From the NCBI RefSeq assembly GCF_001194135.2, contig NC_068994.1, positions 7,558,875 to 7,592,318 on the forward strand: DNA of 33,444 nucleotides, in the 5' to 3' direction. The notes beneath the pieces are model-generated. The model saw only the letters and a list, made by a program, of their open reading frames with translations. It had not been told where the DNA came from and made no database searches. This document shows, piece after piece, positions 21,941 through 33,222 of this stretch. A program made the position numbers and the translations under genes. Numbering within the stretch: position 1 is the stretch's first letter; every line of letters begins with the position of its first letter. The stretch comes from Octopus bimaculoides. Lineage: Eukaryota.

Positions 21941-22080
21941 GCATAACTGGTACTTAATTTATCGACCCCGAAAGGATGAAAGGCAAAGTCGACCTCGGCG
22001 GAATTTGAACTCAGAACATAACGGCAGACGAAATACCGCTAAGCATTTCGCCCGGCGTGCTAACGATTCTGCCAGCTCGC
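21941..22080 (-). mobile_element. tRNA-derived SINE family B, young copy
   Basis: Roughly 90% identical by eye to the reverse complement of 30279-30425. Confidence 0.8.
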
Positions 22081-23767: not shown

Positions 23768-24032
23768 AAGGCACGTGGATTAGTGGGTAAGGCGTTTGGC
23801 ACATGATCACATGGTAGTGAGTTCGATTTCCAGTGGCATATTGTATCCTACAACAAAACACTTTATTCCACATTGCTTCTGTATTTCAAAGGACTGCCCT
23901 TGTCACGTTCTCTGTCATGCTGAGAACTATGTTAAAGGTATTCATGTCGGTGGGGTGCTCAGCCACTTGTGTGTTGGTTTTGTGGGCAGGGTATTATGTT
24001 GATCGGATCAACTGGAACCCCCGATGGAGTGA
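23768..24032 (+). mobile_element. Degenerate SINE with E-like head and D-like 3' half
   Basis: Head aligns with 147-260; 3' half aligns with 13738-13914; duplicated at 24425-24608. Confidence 0.55.
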
Positions 24033-25109
24033 CAATTCATTTGTAAAAAAAAAGAAAAAGGGAAAACTTTGTTATTTAAGAAAACCTGTGACTGACATGA
24101 ATTACTTACAGGTAACAGTGCACTAAAAGCAATTAGCTTAGTGTTTACATATTCAACGTTGTGAGTTTATGTATGGGCCAATAGGTATGTGAGTTTATAA
24201 ATTGTGAATTTATGTATGGACCAATATGGGCCATGCACCCCAGAGAGAGAGAGAGAGACTCAAAGCTTGTAATTAAGAATTAAAAATATATATTTACAGC
24301 AATCAAATAAATCATTTGTAACATGTATTTTGCTTGTTTAAATTTTTTAATTGAATAGAGTTCCTTAATGAATTCAATTAGGTAGGTACAAAATTCGGTT
24401 AATCGTTTTATTAGNNNNNNNNNNTACAACAAAACACTTTATTCCACATTGCTTCTGTATTTCAAAGGACTGCCCTTGTCACGTTCTCTGTCATGCTGAG
24501 AACTATGTTAAAGGTATTCATGTCGGTGGGGTGCTCAGCCACTTGTGTGTTGGTTTTGTGGGCAGGGTATTATGTTGATCGGATCAACTGGAACCCCCGA
24601 TGGAGTGACAATTCATTTGTAAAAAAAAAGAAAAGAAAAGCCGTTGGAAAACAGATTATAGCAGCGACTCCATCTAAGAAGATCTGAAGAAGGAATTGTA
24701 TTCCAAAATATCATCGGACTATAGATAACTAAATTACAACAGGTATATAGTCCATTTTTTGTATTATAGTGCATTGTTGTACCATTCAAAACTTTTTATT
24801 CTTTAAATTCTCCAAGGTTTATCTCTTGATTAATAGTCTTGTCTTATACTTCTTCTGATTTTGTCTTTGTTCCCTTTTTCTTTTCTTATAGAACCCAGTC
24901 CGATGAGAGAAGAGGAATTTCTGAGAGAGCCCCAAAATTTGTAACCAAATGAACCCCGAAACAACAAGCATCCCTTACTCTATACAAGACATTATTCAAC
25001 TTTTGAATGCTTCTTGTAAAGCAACGCACTTCTTTGATTATATCTTTTTGTTTGTCTTATTATTTCAAGTCTCTTTTATATTCTGATAGAATTCCTGGGA
25101 GATTTCAAA

Positions 25110-25981
25110 ATGGCAAACACAGGCATTCCTCTCGATATTTGTTATGGTTCATTATCTTTGTTCACCACAATTCTTCACAACATTTTCCTTCTCTACCATG
25201 TCGACATGTTCGTGTCCTTTTATAAAATTGACAAACTTTCCTTTTGGATTGGGGAATCCATATTCCTCGTGTGGAATTCCTTGAACGACCCACTCTTTGG
25301 CTGGCTCAGCGATCGGCAATACCTCTCGCCACATTCAACAGCATCTTCTTTCAAGAGCAACGAACCATACTCCAAAAGTAATACAGGCTCCTCGTCATCC
25401 AAAGAAGAAAATCTCTACACATACAACAAGTCGAAATACAGTGAAAAGCCATTCCCATCGAGTTATTCCAACTACAGTAAAATCAATAACCGACAGAGCA
25501 ATCCAGAATTATTGCAGTCCGAACCGAATTCTATCAATGCATCGATAATATCACACCGCCTCAACTCCCTTGCATGGAATGGACCCATGTTTGCTGTTTC
25601 TTTTGCCCTCTTCTGGGTATCCTGGCTGTCACCTGGCTTGCAATTTGTCGTTTGCCTCTGCCTCTATGACAGTTTCTTGACTTCAGTTGATCTCCAACAC
25701 AATGCCCTCTTGGCTGACCTGGCCATATCAGCTGACGTACGGACACGGCTTAATGCCTGCAGTGCAATCTTTAGTGCCTTTGGATCTGTGTCCGTGTTTG
25801 TGTCTTATGCTGTTTGGCACCAAGAAAACCTTGTATCATTCCGTGCCTTCTGTTTGTTGCTCTCCGTTTTATCCATCTTGGGGTTCTACGTCGGGATCCG
25901 TCTCCTAAGGACAGTAGCCATTCCTCTCTGTTCAAAGAATTCATCCGTGGCTGTAGAAAATACTCAGTCAAAACTTTCTAG
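25110..25981 (+). CDS. MFSD13A: MFSD13A coding exon 1 (aa 1-290, N-terminal TM helices)
   Basis: ORF-track 295-aa ORF; aaaATGg start; donor AG|gtacat at 25981/25982, phase 2. Confidence 0.95.
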
Positions 25982-28900
25982 GTACATTTTTTTTTAATCT
26001 AAATATTTTTCATCACCACCACCACCACCACCACCACCATCATCATTTTAATGTTAACTTTTCCATGCTTGCATGAGTTGAATGAAATTTATTGAGGCAG
26101 ATTTTTTGTCACCACCTGTTTTCAAGCTTTGTAAATATTTGCCCCATGGCCAGACATGTTTTAACAGATTTTTGGAAATGAATGACATTGCTTGTAATAT
26201 GATTTGGGGGGATTAAAGTATGAATCCAAGGTGGAGGGCTGGCAGAATTGTTAGAGCATTGAACCAATTTTCTCGTGCTGTTTGTACCAGCTGTTTTAAG
26301 TTCAAATTCAGCTAGGGTCAACTTTGCTTTTCTTTTGTCTTTCCAGTTTTGATAAAATAAAGCACCAGTCTAAGACTGTAAATTGCCTGAATCAGTAGAG
26401 CATTGGAGAAAATGCATTGTTCCAGTTCTAAGGTGACGAGCTGGTAGAACTGTTAGCATGCCAGGCAAAATTCTTGGCAGTATTTTGTCCACTTTTATGC
26501 TCTGAGTTCAAATTCTGCCGAGGTCAGTTTTGCCTTTCATCCTTTTGGGGTTGATAAAATAAGCACCAATTGAACCCTGGGGTCAATGTAATCAACTTAC
26601 CCCCTCCCCCGAAATTGCTGACCTTGTTCCAAAATTTGAAACCAATATTTTATTTATAGCACTTCGTTCTCTAAGTTCACTTGTGGCAACACTGGTGCCA
26701 AGCTGTATCAGTCCTTACCTTTTCCTCACGCAGCATTGGTGATATAGAGCAGTGCTCCACAACCGGTATACCATGGCACACTGATGTGTCATAAGACAAT
26801 GCTAGACAAAATATATATGTGTAAACATGCAAAATGAGAGGAAGAGACATCAGAGTCTAAGTTTGAATCATTAGAGTGCTACTATAAGTGTTTTCTATAT
26901 TTAGAATCTCTGGATCTCATCTATTGATAACTCTTCGAAATGCCGGTGTTTTAATGGTGGCATCTGATGAAGGATATGTTATCTATGTGGCCTGCTTGTT
27001 TGTTGTACCTTGTTTATCATTTTGTCCATGTTCCTTTGCAACGCCATGTACCTAGATATGTATCTATATGTACATGTAGATGAAGGTATGTACATACATG
27101 TACATATATATGCATATACTCATATATTGTTTATATATATATATATATCTACATACACATGGCCGGTATCTTTGTTTCCATCTACTAAATCCACCACAAT
27201 GCTTTGGTCAGCCCAGGGCTATAGTAGAAGACACTTGCCTAAAGTGCCATGTAGTGAAACTGAACCCAGAACCATTTGGTTGAGAAGTAAACTAATTACA
27301 TAGCCAAATTTGCACCTAATTGTCTGTTAATTTTCCCCTTTAACACAGCACAATGCTCTCTTTGTTCTTATTTTTTTTATCAAAATGTTACTAATTTTTC
27401 ATTATTCTTCACAGCTCCCTCAATTATCTCCGTCATTTTGGATCCTGTTCAAAAAGTTCTACCGACGACCTGAAGAATTATGTCCGTCAGTTAACAACAC
27501 ATCAAAATTTTATATGGTTTGCTCTCATGAATCTCATCCAGGTAAGGAGAAGACATCTATGCAGTTACAGTGTGTATGTGTGTAAACCTCCAGAATGTTG
27601 GTTTCTAATTTTGGCTGATTTAGGATTTGAAAGCTATTTTAGAGCCAGGAGTACACAAAAGTGCATTCACTGGTGCTTACAATCCAGTTATGTGAAGGAA
27701 ATTGTGTCCTTGTACTTCATTCTAATCAATGTAGCATAGCTGTCATTTTGTGCTTTCAAACTGCATTTAATCCAAAGGTCATAAATATGAAACCCTTTCA
27801 ACTCCAGGTTGAAAATTTAATTCAGTTCTGTCAATCCACTGCCCTTAACATTAATAATAATAACACTGATGATAATAATAATAATAATAATAACAACAAG
27901 AGCACTCAGAGAGTGCAAACCTCCCCCAAGGCAACACTAACATCCTCTCAACGATTAGCCAGAGATGATTTTTAAAATGAGAAAAATCTGAAATAAACTT
28001 GACAGCTCTCACAAGCGAGAATACTAAAAATGAACCCAACTGCTCTCAAAAAGTAAGTAAAAAGACAAGGAAAATAATGCAGAATCCTTGTCCAGTACCG
28101 GATTGATCTCAAAATCTAATCAGTTCGTGCCAATCACAAGGCCAAACATCCCTGAAAGTTTCATCCGAATCCATCCAGTGGTTCTTGAGATATCTTATTC
28201 ACGGACAAATAAACATGACTCTTTTACTTGTTTCAGTCATTTGACTGTGGTCATGCTGGAGCACCGCCTTTAGTTGAGCAAATCAACCCCAGGACTTATT
28301 TTTTGTAAGCTTAGTACTTATTCTATCAGTCTCTTTTGCTGAATCGCTAAGTTCTGCAAACAATAACCACCATCTACCAATGCTTACCAAATACATAACT
28401 GTCGAATCAGTATTATCATAAATGTGAGATAAACCCTTCTTAGCATAGTTTTGATCTCTGCTCCCTTAATCCTCTGCTTTATCTCCTTTACAGGTTTTTC
28501 ATTGTCATTTCAACAGCAACTTCTTTCCATTATTCTTGGATGTCTTACTGGGAAAAAATGGCAATTCACTCGGAGCTCTGCTACTTGGTATGTCTGCAAT
28601 CACAGTCTTTTTTTATTCTGAAAAACAGAAAATCTTTGAATGTCTTCACCCTATTTTGCTGTCTTTCTGGTATAGCAGGAATAGCATAAATGTAATCTCT
28701 ACCAAAAGAAGATAAAAGTTCTAAAATTAGACGACTGATCATGTTGCAGCTTTGTAGTCAAAATATATTTGGGACTCATTGTGAATAACCTCCCCCAGAG
28801 CTGTTTATTTTTGTCTTTAATTGAAAGAAAAAAAAAATTGGATTTTTGTTATGAAACAAGCGTGTATTGAACCCAGCACTTCATCTGGTAAAAGAGCAAG

Positions 28901-31900
28901 GCTGAGACATTTTGCAATTGAGGAAATTACCGATGTTTCTTCTTCAGGCAAAAACTTTACCCTTATGTAGACGACGAGAGTGATTTTGGACAATCAAACT
29001 GGTGAAATAAGTTGCAATTCAAGTGAACACATATGGTCATTGAGAAATAGGTCTATCATCGTTATTCTCCTGAATATTGTTTGTAACTCTGTTCATTAGT
29101 TTGCCTGTAATTCTTAATCTTCAGCTATGTATGGAATTACTTATATTTTTGCCCAGGGCATCAACCGGTGTCAGCCCTAGGTCTGAAAGCGTTAATGAAT
29201 TTAACTGGGGTATTTTAACTCAGGTATTTATACATGCTTTGACAGCAGATCTAGGGGTACTGTTATATTTCTCTTGTTTACTTACAAAGAATAGAATAAT
29301 AATCCAGACAGGTGTGTTGTCTGTGGTTCAATATACTTCTCTCATTTACTCACAAAGAAGAAAACACATTGGTACTCCAGGTAGGTGAGAAGTCTGTTTA
29401 TTCCAACTGTAAAACTCAAGACTGTAATAATAATGTAAACCAAAAATCAAGATTACTTCAATAATAACAACACATGCACAGGTTCAATTCCACTTCTTTA
29501 TTGTTAGTTGGGACCATCATTGATGGAGAGCGCTGATGGACCTGCATAACGATGTCTCTGGAACCACTAACTTTACTGTGGAGAGCAGTAAATATCAAAT
29601 TAGAAATAATTAGATATTTGATGACTAAGAGAAACGTATTAGTTAATGACTAATATTATTTCAATTACTTCACCGAGTATGGGCAACAACTCTGGACATG
29701 TTTCTTTTTTACTATGACTATGACCTCATCAGCAAATCTTAGTTTGTTTGTTCTTTTTCTTCTCCCTTGTTGCTTCAAGTCCTTTCTCCAAGCATTACTG
29801 TTTTGTTTCTTTTCCAGGGGTCTCTTTCGTGTTCCCACACATCAACAACATCTACTTTTTGTCCCTTTGCCGACGGCACGGAGTCTATAGAGTGGTTCTC
29901 CTTATGTTTGTTATGAAATTTTTATTGACTCTAACAATGTGTGGAATTGGTTCCAATTGTATCTGGGCCATTTGTATCTATATCGCAAGGTAAGTACTTC
30001 TCACTATCTCTCTCTCTCTCTCTCTTTTGTATACATCTGCTCATCATCATCATTACATTTACATGACACTAAACTCAGCTTGCACGTAACAAACATATTG
30101 CTTATGTGAATTAGAAAAAGGAACTTTGAGTATTAATCCTGTAGTATTTAAAACCCATATAGTCTCCCTGTTTTATGTTCAAACTGGCAGGATCTGGTTT
30201 CTCACACTTACCCTACAATGTCATTCTAAAACTAAGCAATCACATCCTTGAAATCTCAAAGATAATTCTTGATTAAGGGCGGCGAGCTGGCAGAATCGTT
30301 AGCACGCCGGGCGAAATGCTTAGCGGTATTTCGTCTGCCATTACATTCTGAGTTCAAACTCCGCCGAGGTCGACTTTGCCTTTCATCCTTTAGGGGTTGA
30401 TTAAACAAGTACCAGTTACGCACTGGGGTCGATCTAATCGACTTAAACCCTTTGTCTGTCCTTGTTTGTCCCCTCTATGTTTGCCCCTTGTGGGCAATAA
30501 AGAAATGGGTAATTCATGATTAATACAAAACACTATAAATAATTATAAGCATTACATTTCACTGAGTAATCTGAATGCCTTAAGGGGTTAATGTATCCTT
30601 AATATTTCAGCAACCGCGTCTTCACAGAAGGGACCTGTAAGCTCCTCAACCTCGTTGTCAGCGATCTTGTCGATGAAGACTGTGTCATACACGGCAGGCA
30701 TCAACCGGTGTCGGCTCTGATCTTTGGAACCGTGGCTCTTCTATCGAAACCTGGTCAGACACTAGCACCCCTCCTGGGGACATGGATGTTAAGTTGGCAG
30801 ACAGGTCCGTAACAGTTTTCTTCCTTTTTTTAACCATTTTCTTTTCCTTTGCTTTCTCTTACAATTAACTTTTGGTGCCAAATTAATCACAGTTCAATCA
30901 TTTTCTTTTTGTTACCTTTTGCTGGTTTCAATCATTGGATTGTAGCCATACTGGAGCACTTACCTTGAAGGCTTTTACTCAAACAAATCAATCCCAGTAC
31001 TCGTTCTGTCAATCGCTTTTTGCTGAACTGCTAAGTTAAGGGGACATACACAGGTCATCAAGCAGTAGCATGGGGGACACACATTATAGGCTTCCATACA
31101 ATTTCTGTTTGTGAAATTTACACACAAGGGCATTGGTCAGGGTTATAGCAAAAGACACTTTACCAAAGTTCCATGTAATGGAATTGAACCTGAAACCAAA
31201 TGGCTCAAAAGTGGGCCTTGAGCCAACTAAAACCTTGTGAGCAGATTTAAGTTAGTTTTCTACTCGAGTCATGTCAACTCATAAGGGCCGGTTTCCCGGT
31301 TTTCATAGCATATATATATTCTCCACCTGGACAGGACACCAGTCCCTCGCAGGTTTACTCATTTTTGCCAGCTGAGTGGACTGGAGCAACATGAAGTGAA
31401 GTGTTTTGCTCAAGAACACAATGTGTCACCCAGTTCAGGAATTGAAACTGCAATCTTACAATCATGAGTCCAACACCCAAACCAATAAACCACACGCCTC
31501 CACTGCGAGTGGATTTGGTAGATGGAAACAGAAAGAAGCCTATCATGTATGTGTGTGTGTGTGTGTGTGCATGTGTATCTTTCATGCGTTTGTTCCCCCT
31601 CCCACTTCACAACTGGTGTTTGTGTGTTTACATCCCGTTAGCTTAGCAGTTCAGTGAAAGAGACTGACAGAACCAGTTACCAAGCGTAAAAAATAAATAT
31701 TATGGTCAATTGGTGCAACTATAATCCTTCAAGGCGGTGCCCCAGCATGGCCACAGTCTATTTAAAGTTTGTGTTTACATCCCATTAGCTTAGCGGTTCA
31801 GTGAAAGAGACTGACAGAATCAGTTACCAAGCGTAAAAAATAAATATTATGGTCAATTGGTTCAATTATAATTCTTCAAGGCAGTGCCCCAGCATGGCCA

Positions 31901-32382
31901 CAGTCTATTTAAAGTTTGTATTTACATCCCGTTAGCTTAGTGGTTCAGTGAAAGAGACTGACAGAATTGGTTGCCAAGCGTAAAAAATAAATATTATGGT
32001 CAATTGGTTTGACTATAATCCTTCAAGGCGGTGCCCCAGCATGGTCACAGAAAAAAACTGAAGAATACAAGATTAAATATGATCCTTTCTCCACTCTTTC
32101 TTTCACAGAAGGAATGTTGGAGACCAGACGTTCTGTAGTTTCTTTTGCTTTCTCTCTTTTGCAGGTCACGAACTGTTCACAGCCGCGTCCAGCGAGGTCC
32201 GGTCATCCGATCTGAGTTCAGACCCAAACCACCGAATCGCCTGCTTCAATCTACTCGTTTACATCCCCATGGTGTGTGCCACATTTCAGATGCTCATCTG
32301 GCTGCTGAAGTTTCGTCTCCACGGACATCGACTGCACTGGATCAAAGCTGTTCGCTCTGGATCGTCTTCTCTAGCTGTATAA
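25110..32382 (+). CDS. MFSD13A: MFSD13A/TMEM180 major facilitator superfamily membrane protein, join(25110..25981,27415..27541,28494..28587,29818..29989,30611..30804,32165..32382), 1677 nt, 558 aa
   Basis: Spliced product contains motifs I recognise from MFSD13A: [77 protein letters not shown]. Exon phases 2,0,1,2,1 join without a frameshift and all introns are GT-AG. Confidence 0.95.
26233..26645 (+). mobile_element. Two to three head-to-tail family B SINEs
   Basis: gctggcagaattgttag at about 26238 and gagctggtagaactgttag at about 26438. Confidence 0.65.
27163..27306 (-). mobile_element. Family A SINE, degenerate
   Basis: Reverse-complement similarity to family A head/core. Confidence 0.65.
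27415..27541 (+). CDS. MFSD13A: MFSD13A coding exon 2 (SLNYLRHFG...[21 protein letters not shown])
   Basis: Acceptor ttcacag| at 27414, donor CAG|gtaagg, 127 nt. Confidence 0.93.
27895..28208 (+). mobile_element. Helentron-associated (HINE/DINE-like) non-autonomous element
   Basis: Starts aacaagagcactcagagag after (TAA)n; internal aaagtttcatccgaatccatccagtggttcttgagatatc...acggacaaataaaca resembles the HINE/DINE core. Recognition from memory only. Confidence 0.4.
28219..28352 (-). mobile_element. Family A SINE 3' tail
   Basis: tcttttacttgtttcagtcatttgactg...; similar tails at 8197-8345 (-), 18790-18911 (+), 30923-31080 (-). Confidence 0.65.
28494..28587 (+). CDS. MFSD13A: MFSD13A coding exon 3 ([31 protein letters not shown])
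   Basis: Acceptor tttacag| at 28493, donor G|gtatgt, 94 nt, ends phase 1. Confidence 0.94.
29818..29989 (+). CDS. MFSD13A: MFSD13A coding exon 4 ([23 protein letters not shown]...CIYIA)
   Basis: Acceptor tttccag| at 29817, donor AG|gtaagt, 172 nt. Confidence 0.94.
30133..30591 (-). mobile_element. piggyBac-like MITE (TTAA-flanked) carrying a nested SINE
   Basis: TTAA at both ends, degenerate CCCTT/AAGGG termini, body is the reverse complement of 33024-33222. Confidence 0.65.
30277..30508 (+). mobile_element. tRNA-derived SINE family B nested in the piggyBac-like MITE
   Basis: ggcggcgagctggcagaatcgttag...gagttcaaa...gccgaggtcgactttgcctttcatcc. Confidence 0.8.
30611..30804 (+). CDS. MFSD13A: MFSD13A coding exon 5 ([12 protein letters not shown]...[10 protein letters not shown])
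   Basis: Acceptor atttcag| at 30610, weak donor G|gtccgt at 30805, 194 nt; phase fits exon 6. Confidence 0.92.
31075..31620. mobile_element. Cluster of nested SINEs (family A -, family A + interrupted by family E -)
   Basis: The family A body gccttgtgag/gagtggatttggtag is split by a minus-strand tRNA-headed element at about 31280-31501. Confidence 0.55.
31620..32048. repeat. Tandem repeat, 147-bp unit x3, derived from the family A SINE tail
   Basis: tttacatccc at 31627, 31774 and 31921. Confidence 0.92.
32165..32382 (+). CDS. MFSD13A: MFSD13A coding exon 6 (HELFTAASS...[23 protein letters not shown])
   Basis: Acceptor cttttgcag| at 32164, TAA at 32380-32382. Confidence 0.93.
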
Positions 32383-33023: not shown

Positions 33024-33222
33024 TAACCCTTAAGCATTTACATTATTCTATCAAATGTAATATTTATTTATTCACATTGCTTTCAATTAGTCATGCATAA
33101 TCTCGTAACTTTGAAATTTCAATGACATGATTGTTTATTTCTAGAATAGCACTGCAAGGTAAGTGTGAGAGGCCAGATCTGGCCAGTCTGAACATAAAAC
33201 TGGCAGAATATTTTGGCTGGAC
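33024..33222 (+). mobile_element. piggyBac-like MITE, 3'-truncated second copy
   Basis: Starts TTAACCCTTAAGCAT; inverse homology to 30133-30591. Confidence 0.6.

What the first reader, a model, noticed from the sequence alone, without database searches (positions are those of the whole stretch)
29157..29180. Candidate 24-nt microexon that re-encodes exon 5's HQPVSAL with only synonymous changes
Seen: ttatatttttgcccag|GGCATCAACCGGTGTCAGCCCTAG|gtctga in intron 3. It shares 16 exact nt with exon 5 (30697-30712). The next three differences are all third-position synonymous (TCA/TCG, GCC/GCT, CTA/CTG). It is phase 1-1 like the host intron, so inclusion gives ...[15 protein letters not shown] with no stop. 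Inference: a fragment of a duplicated exon recruited as an alternative microexon, copying a loop peptide to a second position in the transporter. The donor is weak.
Basis: partly seen in the sequence, partly recalled or inferred. Interest (0 to 1): 0.7.

Follow-up and report, generated by a model that had tools for sequence, protein, structure and literature searches.

The report
Intronic look-alike of an exon fragment
A 24-base stretch inside an intron of a TMEM180-like transporter gene really does repeat part of a later exon and sits between splice-like signals, but nothing available shows it is spliced in, and the indirect evidence favours an inert small copy over a working microexon.

Summary
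29157-29180 (GGCATCAACCGGTGTCAGCCCTAG) lies between cccAG| and |GTctga in a phase-1 intron of a TMEM180/MFSD13A-like gene. It shares 16 exact bases with exon 5 (30697-30712). The next three differences are third-position, synonymous transitions, and inclusion would read [15 protein letters not shown] without a stop.

The repeat is probably not chance. A GC-rich exon 16-mer is expected about 2-4e-4 times per window, although composition-blind tests give only p = 0.02-0.045.

The microexon reading has no direct support:
- Intron 3 alone holds 53 frame-preserving, stop-free AG..GT pseudo-exons.
- The donor is weaker than all three real donors checked in the gene.
- The insert would fall in the middle of a predicted transmembrane helix, not a loop.
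- "Only synonymous changes" is weak evidence. Exon 5 is itself constrained (p about 0.14 for a neutral copy), and the divergence is uneven (0 of 5 against 3 of 3 wobble sites, p = 0.018).

Best reading: an inert short copy of an exon-5 fragment (about 0.5). Rivals are chance (about 0.25) and a real alternative microexon (about 0.15). Junction reads or octopod conservation would decide.

The parts
29157..29180 (+). Candidate 24-nt pseudo-exon or microexon. It is a direct copy of an exon-5 fragment and would encode (G)HQPVSAL(G).
29137..29156 (+). Splice-acceptor-like stretch ttacttatatttttgcccAG. It has a pyrimidine run and a UGC at -7..-5. The CAG may itself come from exon 5's GGCAGG.
   Evidence: rough PWM 4.95, rank 2 of 67 AGs in the intron
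29181..29186 (+). Weak donor-like GTCTGA after TAG.
   Evidence: rough PWM -1.47, rank 15 of 70 GTs; real donors score 1.1, 8.4 and 2.9
29181..29192 (+). Possible decayed continuation of the copy beyond the supposed donor. With one gap it aligns to 30721-30733.
   Evidence: 37 columns, 78% identity; right-flank extension p = 0.046
30697..30718 (+). Parent stretch in exon 5, codons (R)HQPVSAL. The first 16 nt are identical to the copy.
28494..28587 (+). Coding exon upstream of the host intron ([32 protein letters not shown]). It ends in phase 1.
28588..29817 (+).
29818..29989 (+). Coding exon downstream of the host intron ([13 protein letters not shown]...IYIAR).
30611..30804 (+). Exon 5 ([14 protein letters not shown]...WQT), the most conserved exon of the gene. 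Its donor is CAG|GTCCGT.
32165..32382 (+). Last coding exon, with stop TAA at 32380-32382.
25038..25994 (+). Stop-to-stop open frame holding the large first coding exon ([13 protein letters not shown]... with the D-P-x-x-G-W-x-S-D-R motif). Its boundaries were not fixed.
   Evidence: MFS_2 at 25.7 bits, E = 5e-6

Best explanation
The 24-mer is an inert intronic look-alike. It is a short DNA-level copy (about 22-37 nt) of the exon-5 stretch that encodes (R)HQPVSAL, lodged 1,540 nt upstream in intron 3 of a TMEM180/MFSD13A-like MFS transporter gene. Most likely it arose by a small duplication or a templated repair patch. The CAG in front of it may have come with the copy (exon 5 reads GGCAG|GCATC), and the GT behind it is coincidental. 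It is then one of about 50 frame-preserving pseudo-exons in this intron, and it is spliced in either never or only as noise. Shown: the repeat, its improbability given its composition, the frame, the splice-like flanks, and the helix position of the would-be insert. Inferred: the copying mechanism, its direction (exon to intron) and the absence of inclusion. Taken together, 'not a functional exon' (this explanation plus pure chance) has about 0.8 probability.
For: A GC-rich 16-mer shared with exon 5 is expected only 2-4e-4 times per window, and the 24-mer is 62% GC in a 35% GC intron. It is the only exon/non-exon match of 13 nt or more in the window. All three mismatches are transitions, as expected of real divergence. 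Similarity may continue past the supposed donor, so the homology edge need not coincide with the exon edge. The donor TAG|GTCTGA scores below all three real donors checked and ranks 15th of 70 GTs in the intron, whereas SRRM3/4-type microexons characteristically have strong 5' splice sites (10.1101/2024.09.17.613571, introduction). There are 53 equivalent pseudo-exons in the same intron. The insertion point G32|V33 lies inside predicted helix 24-52, so eight residues including His, Gln and Pro would be inserted mid-membrane. Orthologues show no residues at this junction, and one has the two exons fused. The wobble-only pattern is expected about 14% of the time for a neutral copy of a constrained exon (own calculation: 8 wobble sites at double rate against 15 other sites). 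The divergence is uneven, 0 of 5 against 3 of 3 wobble sites (1/56 = 0.018), which a single duplication followed by peptide-level selection does not predict.
Against: Several things coincide: AG immediately before the copy, GT immediately after, length 3n, the same reading frame as in exon 5, and synonymous-only differences. I estimate these jointly at well under 1% for a neutral copy. The acceptor is good (rank 2 of 67) and carries a UGC at -7..-5. A real donor in the same gene also has C at +3 (CAG|GTCCGT). No RNA or cross-species data could be consulted, so non-inclusion is inferred rather than shown. The clustering of all differences at the 3' end is not explained by simple neutral decay either. 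The AF2 model is only moderate (mean pLDDT 65.6; about 61-62 around the junction).
Confidence: 0.5

Rival explanations
1. Pure coincidence. The 16-nt identity, the partial extension and the AG/GT flanks arose independently in the intron, and nothing was ever copied.
For: Composition-blind tests are only marginal. A match of 16 nt or more occurred in 7 of 300 Markov simulations, an ungapped score of 18 or more in 4.5%, and blastn gives E = 0.046. Neither flank extends convincingly (p = 0.12 and 0.046). The finding was selected after the fact by a reader scanning for anything unusual, in a genome with tens of thousands of such windows. Pseudo-exons are abundant.
Against: Chance matches are dominated by AT-rich words; the next best is the 14-nt TCTCTACACATACA. 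For GC-rich 16-mers the expectation is 2-4e-4 per window, and about 1e-6 for this word. The x||x||x continuation has a probability of about 0.002, and three of three mismatches being transitions about 0.04, under randomness.
Confidence: 0.25
2. One reading: a lineage-specific alternative microexon, born from a partial copy of exon 5. When included, it inserts G-HQPVSAL into the transporter between LLL and GVSF.
For: The length is 24 nt, a multiple of 3, and the phase is 1-1. The frame is the same as in exon 5 and there is no stop. The acceptor is good and has a UGC just upstream. The three differences from exon 5 are all synonymous. Similarity drops at or near both supposed exon edges. The gene tolerates a GTC donor elsewhere.
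Against: There are no expression data and no conservation data. The donor is weak, contrary to the known microexon architecture (10.1101/2024.09.17.613571). The insert would lie mid-helix, in a TM8-like helix, and carries Pro, His and Gln. No orthologue has residues there. Synonymous-only differences are expected fairly often anyway, and their 0 of 5 against 3 of 3 distribution (p = 0.018) does not fit long-term peptide selection. The prior for any one of 53 pseudo-exons is low.
Confidence: 0.15
3. An eroded whole-exon duplicate: an old copy of all of exon 5 (a former mutually exclusive or cassette exon), of which only this core is still recognisable.
For: A permissive gapped alignment strings weak matches (CCTGTAA, TCAGC.AT) through about 100 nt upstream of the core, opposite the 5' part of exon 5.
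Against: That left extension is not better than random intron segments (score 3, p = 0.12). A perfect 16-mer next to fully decayed sequence is not what uniform ageing gives. The copy is not adjacent to exon 5, and the phases differ (1-1 against 2-1).
Confidence: 0.05

Closest known systems
Intronic pseudo-exons (AG..GT-flanked, open, unused intron segments)
   Same: It lies deep in an intron between splice-like dinucleotides, preserves the frame, and has one good and one poor splice site. It is one of 53 such segments in the same intron.
   Different: Unlike ordinary pseudo-exons, it repeats a coding stretch of the same gene, in the same frame.
SRRM3/4 (eMIC)-dependent neural microexons
   Same: It is 24 nt long, a multiple of 3, has a UGC close to the 3' splice site, and sits in a conserved membrane-protein gene.
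   Different: It has a weak rather than a strong 5' splice site and no UCUCUC element, and it would lie mid-helix rather than on a surface. Conservation and neural inclusion are untested (10.1101/2024.09.17.613571).
Tandem exon duplication giving mutually exclusive or cassette exons
   Same: Both involve intragenic reuse of exon sequence on the same strand.
   Different: Only about 11-19% of the parent exon is similar. The copy is two introns away rather than adjacent, and the phases differ.
Short templated insertions or micro-duplications from error-prone double-strand-break repair (e.g. polymerase-theta end joining; own knowledge)
   Same: It is a copy of tens of nucleotides from a nearby template in cis, with sharp edges and mismatches clustered at one end.
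   Different: The 1.5-kb distance to the template is larger than is typical. No empty-site allele or relative is available to prove an insertion.
TMEM180 / MFSD13A (MFS_2, GPH-like orphan transporter) - the host gene
   Same: The C-terminal half is 53-62% identical to vertebrate TMEM180. Exon 5 is 75-85% identical across animals. The first coding exon reaches MFS_2 at 25.7 bits, and the best fold match is MelB.
   Different: The first coding exon carries a Ser/Asn-rich low-complexity stretch of about 80 residues (25326-25566). The Pfam score is just under the curated cut-off.

Membership tests
SRRM3/4-type (neural) microexon | Length 3-27 nt, multiple of 3, frame-preserving, no stop | tested here: met
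   24 nt, phase 1-1, reads GHQPVSALG. However, 53 segments in this intron meet the same test at 3-60 nt.
SRRM3/4-type (neural) microexon | Intronic enhancer UCUCUC...UGC just upstream of the 3' splice site | tested here: inconclusive
   There is a UGC at -7..-5 (tttttGCccag) but no UCUCUC within 70 nt upstream. A 3-mer has little weight.
SRRM3/4-type (neural) microexon | 5' splice site stronger than average | tested here: not met
   TAG|GTCTGA pairs with U1 at 5 of 9 positions. Its rough PWM score is -1.47, against 1.1, 8.4 and 2.9 for the real donors, and it ranks 15 of 70.
SRRM3/4-type (neural) microexon | Tissue-regulated inclusion seen in RNA | not testable with these tools
SRRM3/4-type (neural) microexon | Conservation of the exon and flanking intron in related species | not testable with these tools
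   No relative closer than 85% on exon 5 was found. The window's ORFs are not in the collection, and the scans and the search of the intronic ORF were empty.
SRRM3/4-type (neural) microexon | Insert lies at a protein surface or loop | tested here: not met
   The junction G32|V33 is inside predicted helix 24-52 (local pLDDT about 61-62, so moderate confidence).
Duplicated exon (tandem exon duplication) | Similarity over the whole exon, with like length and phases, next to the parent exon | tested here: not met
   Only 22-37 of 194 nt are similar, and the left flank gives p = 0.12. Exon 4 lies between copy and parent, and the phases are 1-1 against 2-1.
Short templated insertion / micro-duplication | Copy of tens of nt from a nearby cis template, beyond chance | tested here: inconclusive
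   Copy and parent are 1,540 nt apart on the same strand. The expectation is 2-4e-4 for GC-rich words, but p = 0.02-0.045 by composition-blind tests.
Short templated insertion / micro-duplication | Empty site in an allele or related species | not testable with these tools
   No related genomic sequence was reachable.
TMEM180/MFSD13A (host gene) | Sequence homology to named TMEM180 proteins across the C-terminal half | tested here: met
   E = 1e-46 to 1e-41 at 53-62% identity, including NCBI 'transmembrane protein 180'.
TMEM180/MFSD13A (host gene) | MFS_2 (PF13347) domain above the curated cut-off | tested here: inconclusive
   The first coding exon alone scores 25.7 bits against a cut-off of 27. 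The C-terminal fragments give no hit. PF13347 is precomputed on several homologues.

The most novel reading that the evidence does not exclude
A young, lineage-specific alternative microexon created from a 24-nt intragenic copy of the transporter's most conserved motif (HQPVSAL of R-x-Q-x-x-S-A-L-x-F-G). It would be kept in frame by selection and included in some tissue, lengthening or kinking a TM8-like helix of an orphan MFS_2 transporter.
Probability: 0.13. Interest if true: 0.55.

Novelty: new member of a known kind. Interest (0 to 1): 0.2.

Why it matters
If the microexon were real, it would be an unusually clean example of microexon birth: a partial exon copy that becomes a new in-frame cassette, with its origin still readable in the same gene. 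That would bear on how microexon programmes grow outside vertebrates. As the evidence stands, it is a cautionary case. An open frame, AG/GT flanks and synonymous-only differences from a constrained parent exon are all expected at appreciable rates for inert intron sequence, so they should not be read as evidence of exon use without junction reads or conservation.

Tried and rejected
**RNA-seq.** I did not try to reach reads by another route and did not use read laying with run ids from memory.

**Close relatives.**
- The protein search with exons 3-5 found only distant TMEM180s, at most 62% identity at near-full query coverage and at most 85% on exon 5.
- Exact look-ups of 16 ORF variants around the site were not in the collection. 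The first call was probably spoilt because non-ATG start codons were translated literally.
- A search with the 103-aa intronic ORF over the candidate found nothing.
- Two metagenome scans, one with the exact 35-mer and one with a degenerate [14 protein letters not shown] pattern, found nothing.
- Two orthologous loci were fetched. They are too distant to test conservation, but neither has an insert, and one has no intron at the site.

**Literature.** A 2026 preprint includes Octopus bimaculoides splicing data, but no supplements are held.

**Folding the inclusion isoform.** The skip form was accepted. I draw no conclusion from that difference.

**Rejected ideas.**
- Whole-exon duplicate: the left-flank extension is not significant.
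- Transposon-borne sequence: blastn of intron 3 against the window shows no other copy.
- Editing or duplex partner: the only reverse-strand match is 13 of 16 at 25742, and the local RNA fold has z = -0.99.
- Known RNA family or tRNA: none found.
- Assembly artefact: the nearest N run is 4.7 kb away.

**Structure searches.** The PDB sequence search was empty. The fold search gave only a weak MelB top hit.

Full report
**1. What is there**

The window's + strand carries the 3' two-thirds or more of a TMEM180/MFSD13A-like gene. tblastn with homologues places the coding exons as follows:
- 28494-28587: [32 protein letters not shown]
- 29818-29989: [13 protein letters not shown]...IYIAR
- 30611-30804: [14 protein letters not shown]...[13 protein letters not shown]...WQT
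- 32165-32382: GHELF...SSLAV, then the stop

A large first coding exon lies in the open frame 25038-25994. It reads [13 protein letters not shown]... and contains ...[11 protein letters not shown].... The spliced C-terminal half hits proteins named 'transmembrane protein 180' at E = 1e-46 to 1e-41. The first exon reaches Pfam MFS_2 at 25.7 bits, just under the cut-off of 27. The best fold match of the AF2 model is the melibiose permease MelB, and it is weak.

**2. The observation**

It is correct in every detail.
- 29157-29180 is GGCATCAACCGGTGTCAGCCCTAG, between ...ttatatttttgcccag and gtctga....
- Its first 16 nt are identical to 30697-30712 in exon 5. The repeat finder reports 20/22 identity.
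- The differences at nt 17, 20 and 23 are TCA/TCG, GCC/GCT and CTA/CTG. All are third positions, synonymous and transitions.
- Exon 3 ends after the first base of a codon, so inclusion gives [21 protein letters not shown] with no stop.

**3. Is the repeat more than chance?**

It is the only exact match of 13 nt or more between about 1.5 kb of coding sequence and the rest of the window. The runner-up is the AT-rich 14-mer TCTCTACACATACA.

Tests that ignore which word matched are only marginal:
- The longest exon/non-exon match reached 16 nt in 7 of 300 third-order Markov simulations.
- An ungapped +1/-1 score of 18 or more occurred in 4.5% of simulations.
- blastn gives E = 0.046.

Those chance hits come almost entirely from AT-rich words. 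The analytic expectation is 0.017 per window for all exon 16-mers. It is only 2-4e-4 for words with GC of 10/16 or more, and 1-3e-6 for this word. The 24-mer is a 62% GC island in a 35% GC intron. The continuation x||x||x has a probability of about 0.002 by chance, and three of three mismatches being transitions about 0.04. I therefore think a real copying event is more likely than coincidence. In a whole-genome scan, however, a few such coincidences are expected.

The similarity does not extend convincingly. Anchored extension to the left scores 3 (p = 0.12). Extension to the right scores 4 (p = 0.046). The right-hand extension runs past the supposed donor to 29192. One possible extra on the left: exon 5 reads GGCAG|GCATC and the copy CCCAG|GGCATC, so the 'acceptor' CAG may itself be copied sequence with a 1-nt indel.

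**4. Do the exon-like properties mean anything?**

AG in front, GT behind, a length of 3n and an open frame describe 53 segments of 3-60 nt in this one 1,230-nt intron.

I ranked the sites with a rough textbook PWM, used for ranking only:
- The acceptor is good: 4.95, rank 2 of 67 AGs. Three of the four real acceptors score 8.4-9.9 (exon 5's scores -0.4).
- The donor TAG|GTCTGA scores -1.47, rank 15 of 70 GTs. That is below all three real donors checked (1.1, 8.4, 2.9).

Known SRRM3/4-dependent microexons have stronger-than-average 5' splice sites, plus a UCUCUC...UGC enhancer upstream (10.1101/2024.09.17.613571, introduction). Here there is a UGC at -7..-5 but no UCUCUC, and the donor is weak. 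In fairness, the real donor of the intron after exon 5 is CAG|GTCCGT, which also has C at +3.

**5. The 'only synonymous changes' argument**

Differences between a constrained exon and its copy are enriched at wobble sites whether or not the copy is coding, because the exon lineage can change only there. There are 8 wobble sites evolving on both lineages and 15 other sites evolving on one. The chance that three differences all fall on wobble sites is then about (16/31)^3 = 0.14.

The divergence is also uneven. None of the first five wobble sites differs, and all of the last three do (1/56 = 0.018). A single old duplication kept by peptide-level selection should spread synonymous change evenly. 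The pattern looks more like a 16-nt perfect core with an error-rich or partly coincidental edge. Simple neutral decay does not explain this clustering either. I list it as unexplained.

**6. Where the insert would go**

An AF2 model of the C-terminal half was built from a 12-sequence alignment (mean pLDDT 65.6, pTM 0.58). It gives helices at 10-22, 24-52, 54-75, 80-117, 122-135, 137-154 and onwards.
- The exon 3/4 junction (G32|V33) is eight residues into helix 24-52. This is the hydrophobic [27 protein letters not shown]8-like in MFS numbering.
- Eight extra residues containing His, Gln and Pro would therefore be inserted mid-membrane, not in a loop.
- The parent HQPVSAL (residues 120-126) is the end of a loop plus the first turn of helix 122-135.
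- It lies in the best-conserved motif of the family: R119, S124, A125, L126, F128 and G129 are invariant and Q121 nearly so in 20 sequences.

Homologues from vertebrates and other animals have no residues between ..LLG and [VIL]S[FY]. In one orthologous locus (L001, GCA_949826985.1) the two exons are contiguous, with no intron at all.

**7. What could not be done**

The two tests that would decide the matter were out of reach.
- No octopod or other close relative is present in the reachable collections.
- A preprint with Octopus bimaculoides splicing data holds no searchable supplements.

**8. Other checks**

There is no other copy of the block or its flanks in the window, so it is not visibly transposon-borne. 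There is no reverse-complement partner and no unusual RNA structure (z = -0.99). There is no Rfam family or tRNA. It is not near an assembly gap.

**9. Verdict**

The sequence observation is confirmed. The repeat is probably a real, short, DNA-level copy of an exon-5 fragment. The step from there to 'alternative microexon' is unsupported and, on indirect grounds, unlikely.

My probabilities:
- inert copy: about 0.5
- coincidence: about 0.25
- real, regulated microexon: about 0.15
- eroded whole-exon duplicate: about 0.05
- other: the remainder

The joint coincidence of AG, GT, 3n, a shared frame and synonymous-only change is real and keeps the microexon reading alive. That is why I do not score it near zero. 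A single RNA-seq overlay or one related genome would settle it.

Noticed in passing
window 31623-32050: A 147-nt unit repeated 2.9 times in tandem (93% matches), in the last intron, ending about 115 nt upstream of the last coding exon's acceptor.
   Followed up: partly
window 30275-30500 (+): A SINE-like element with a tRNA-like head (gggcggcgagctggcagaatcgttagcacgccgggcgaaatgcttagcgg...) in the intron before exon 5. ARAGORN and Rfam report nothing. A similar translated motif recurs near 26432-26551 and 21950-22010.
   Followed up: partly
window 30154-30264 and 33106-33216: A 111-nt inverted repeat, 79% complementary, bracketing exon 5 through the last exon. These are probably two copies of a dispersed element in opposite orientation.
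   Followed up: no
window 23849-24058 and 24425-24634: 210 nt are 100% identical on either side of the 10-N gap at 24415-24424. This looks like unmerged contig ends, an assembly artefact, rather than a biological duplication.
   Followed up: partly
window 25326-25566: The large first coding exon carries a Ser/Asn/Lys-rich low-complexity stretch of about 80 residues ([41 protein letters not shown]...) between the DP..GW.SDR motif and the next hydrophobic segment. It could be a lineage-specific loop expansion or an unrecognised intron.
   Followed up: no
window 30805-30810: The real donor of the intron after exon 5 is CAG|GTCCGT, with C at +3 and +4. This is an unusually weak-looking constitutive donor after the gene's most conserved exon.
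   Followed up: partly
window 28334-28353 and 31018-31037; 28240-28360: A shared 20-mer, TTTTGCTGAA(TC/CT)GCTAAGTT, and the surrounding 'gtcatgctggagcaccgcc...' sequence look like two copies of a dispersed repeat in neighbouring introns.
   Followed up: no
protein P0089 (homologue), aligned to window 30624-30800: One homologue has a 19-residue insert exactly between HGR and the HQ..SAL motif, and another after SNRIFT. These probably reflect retained introns in that gene call.
   Followed up: no
whole window: There are 12 runs of N totalling 12.8% of the window, so any exon or repeat census of the upstream 24 kb is incomplete.
   Followed up: yes
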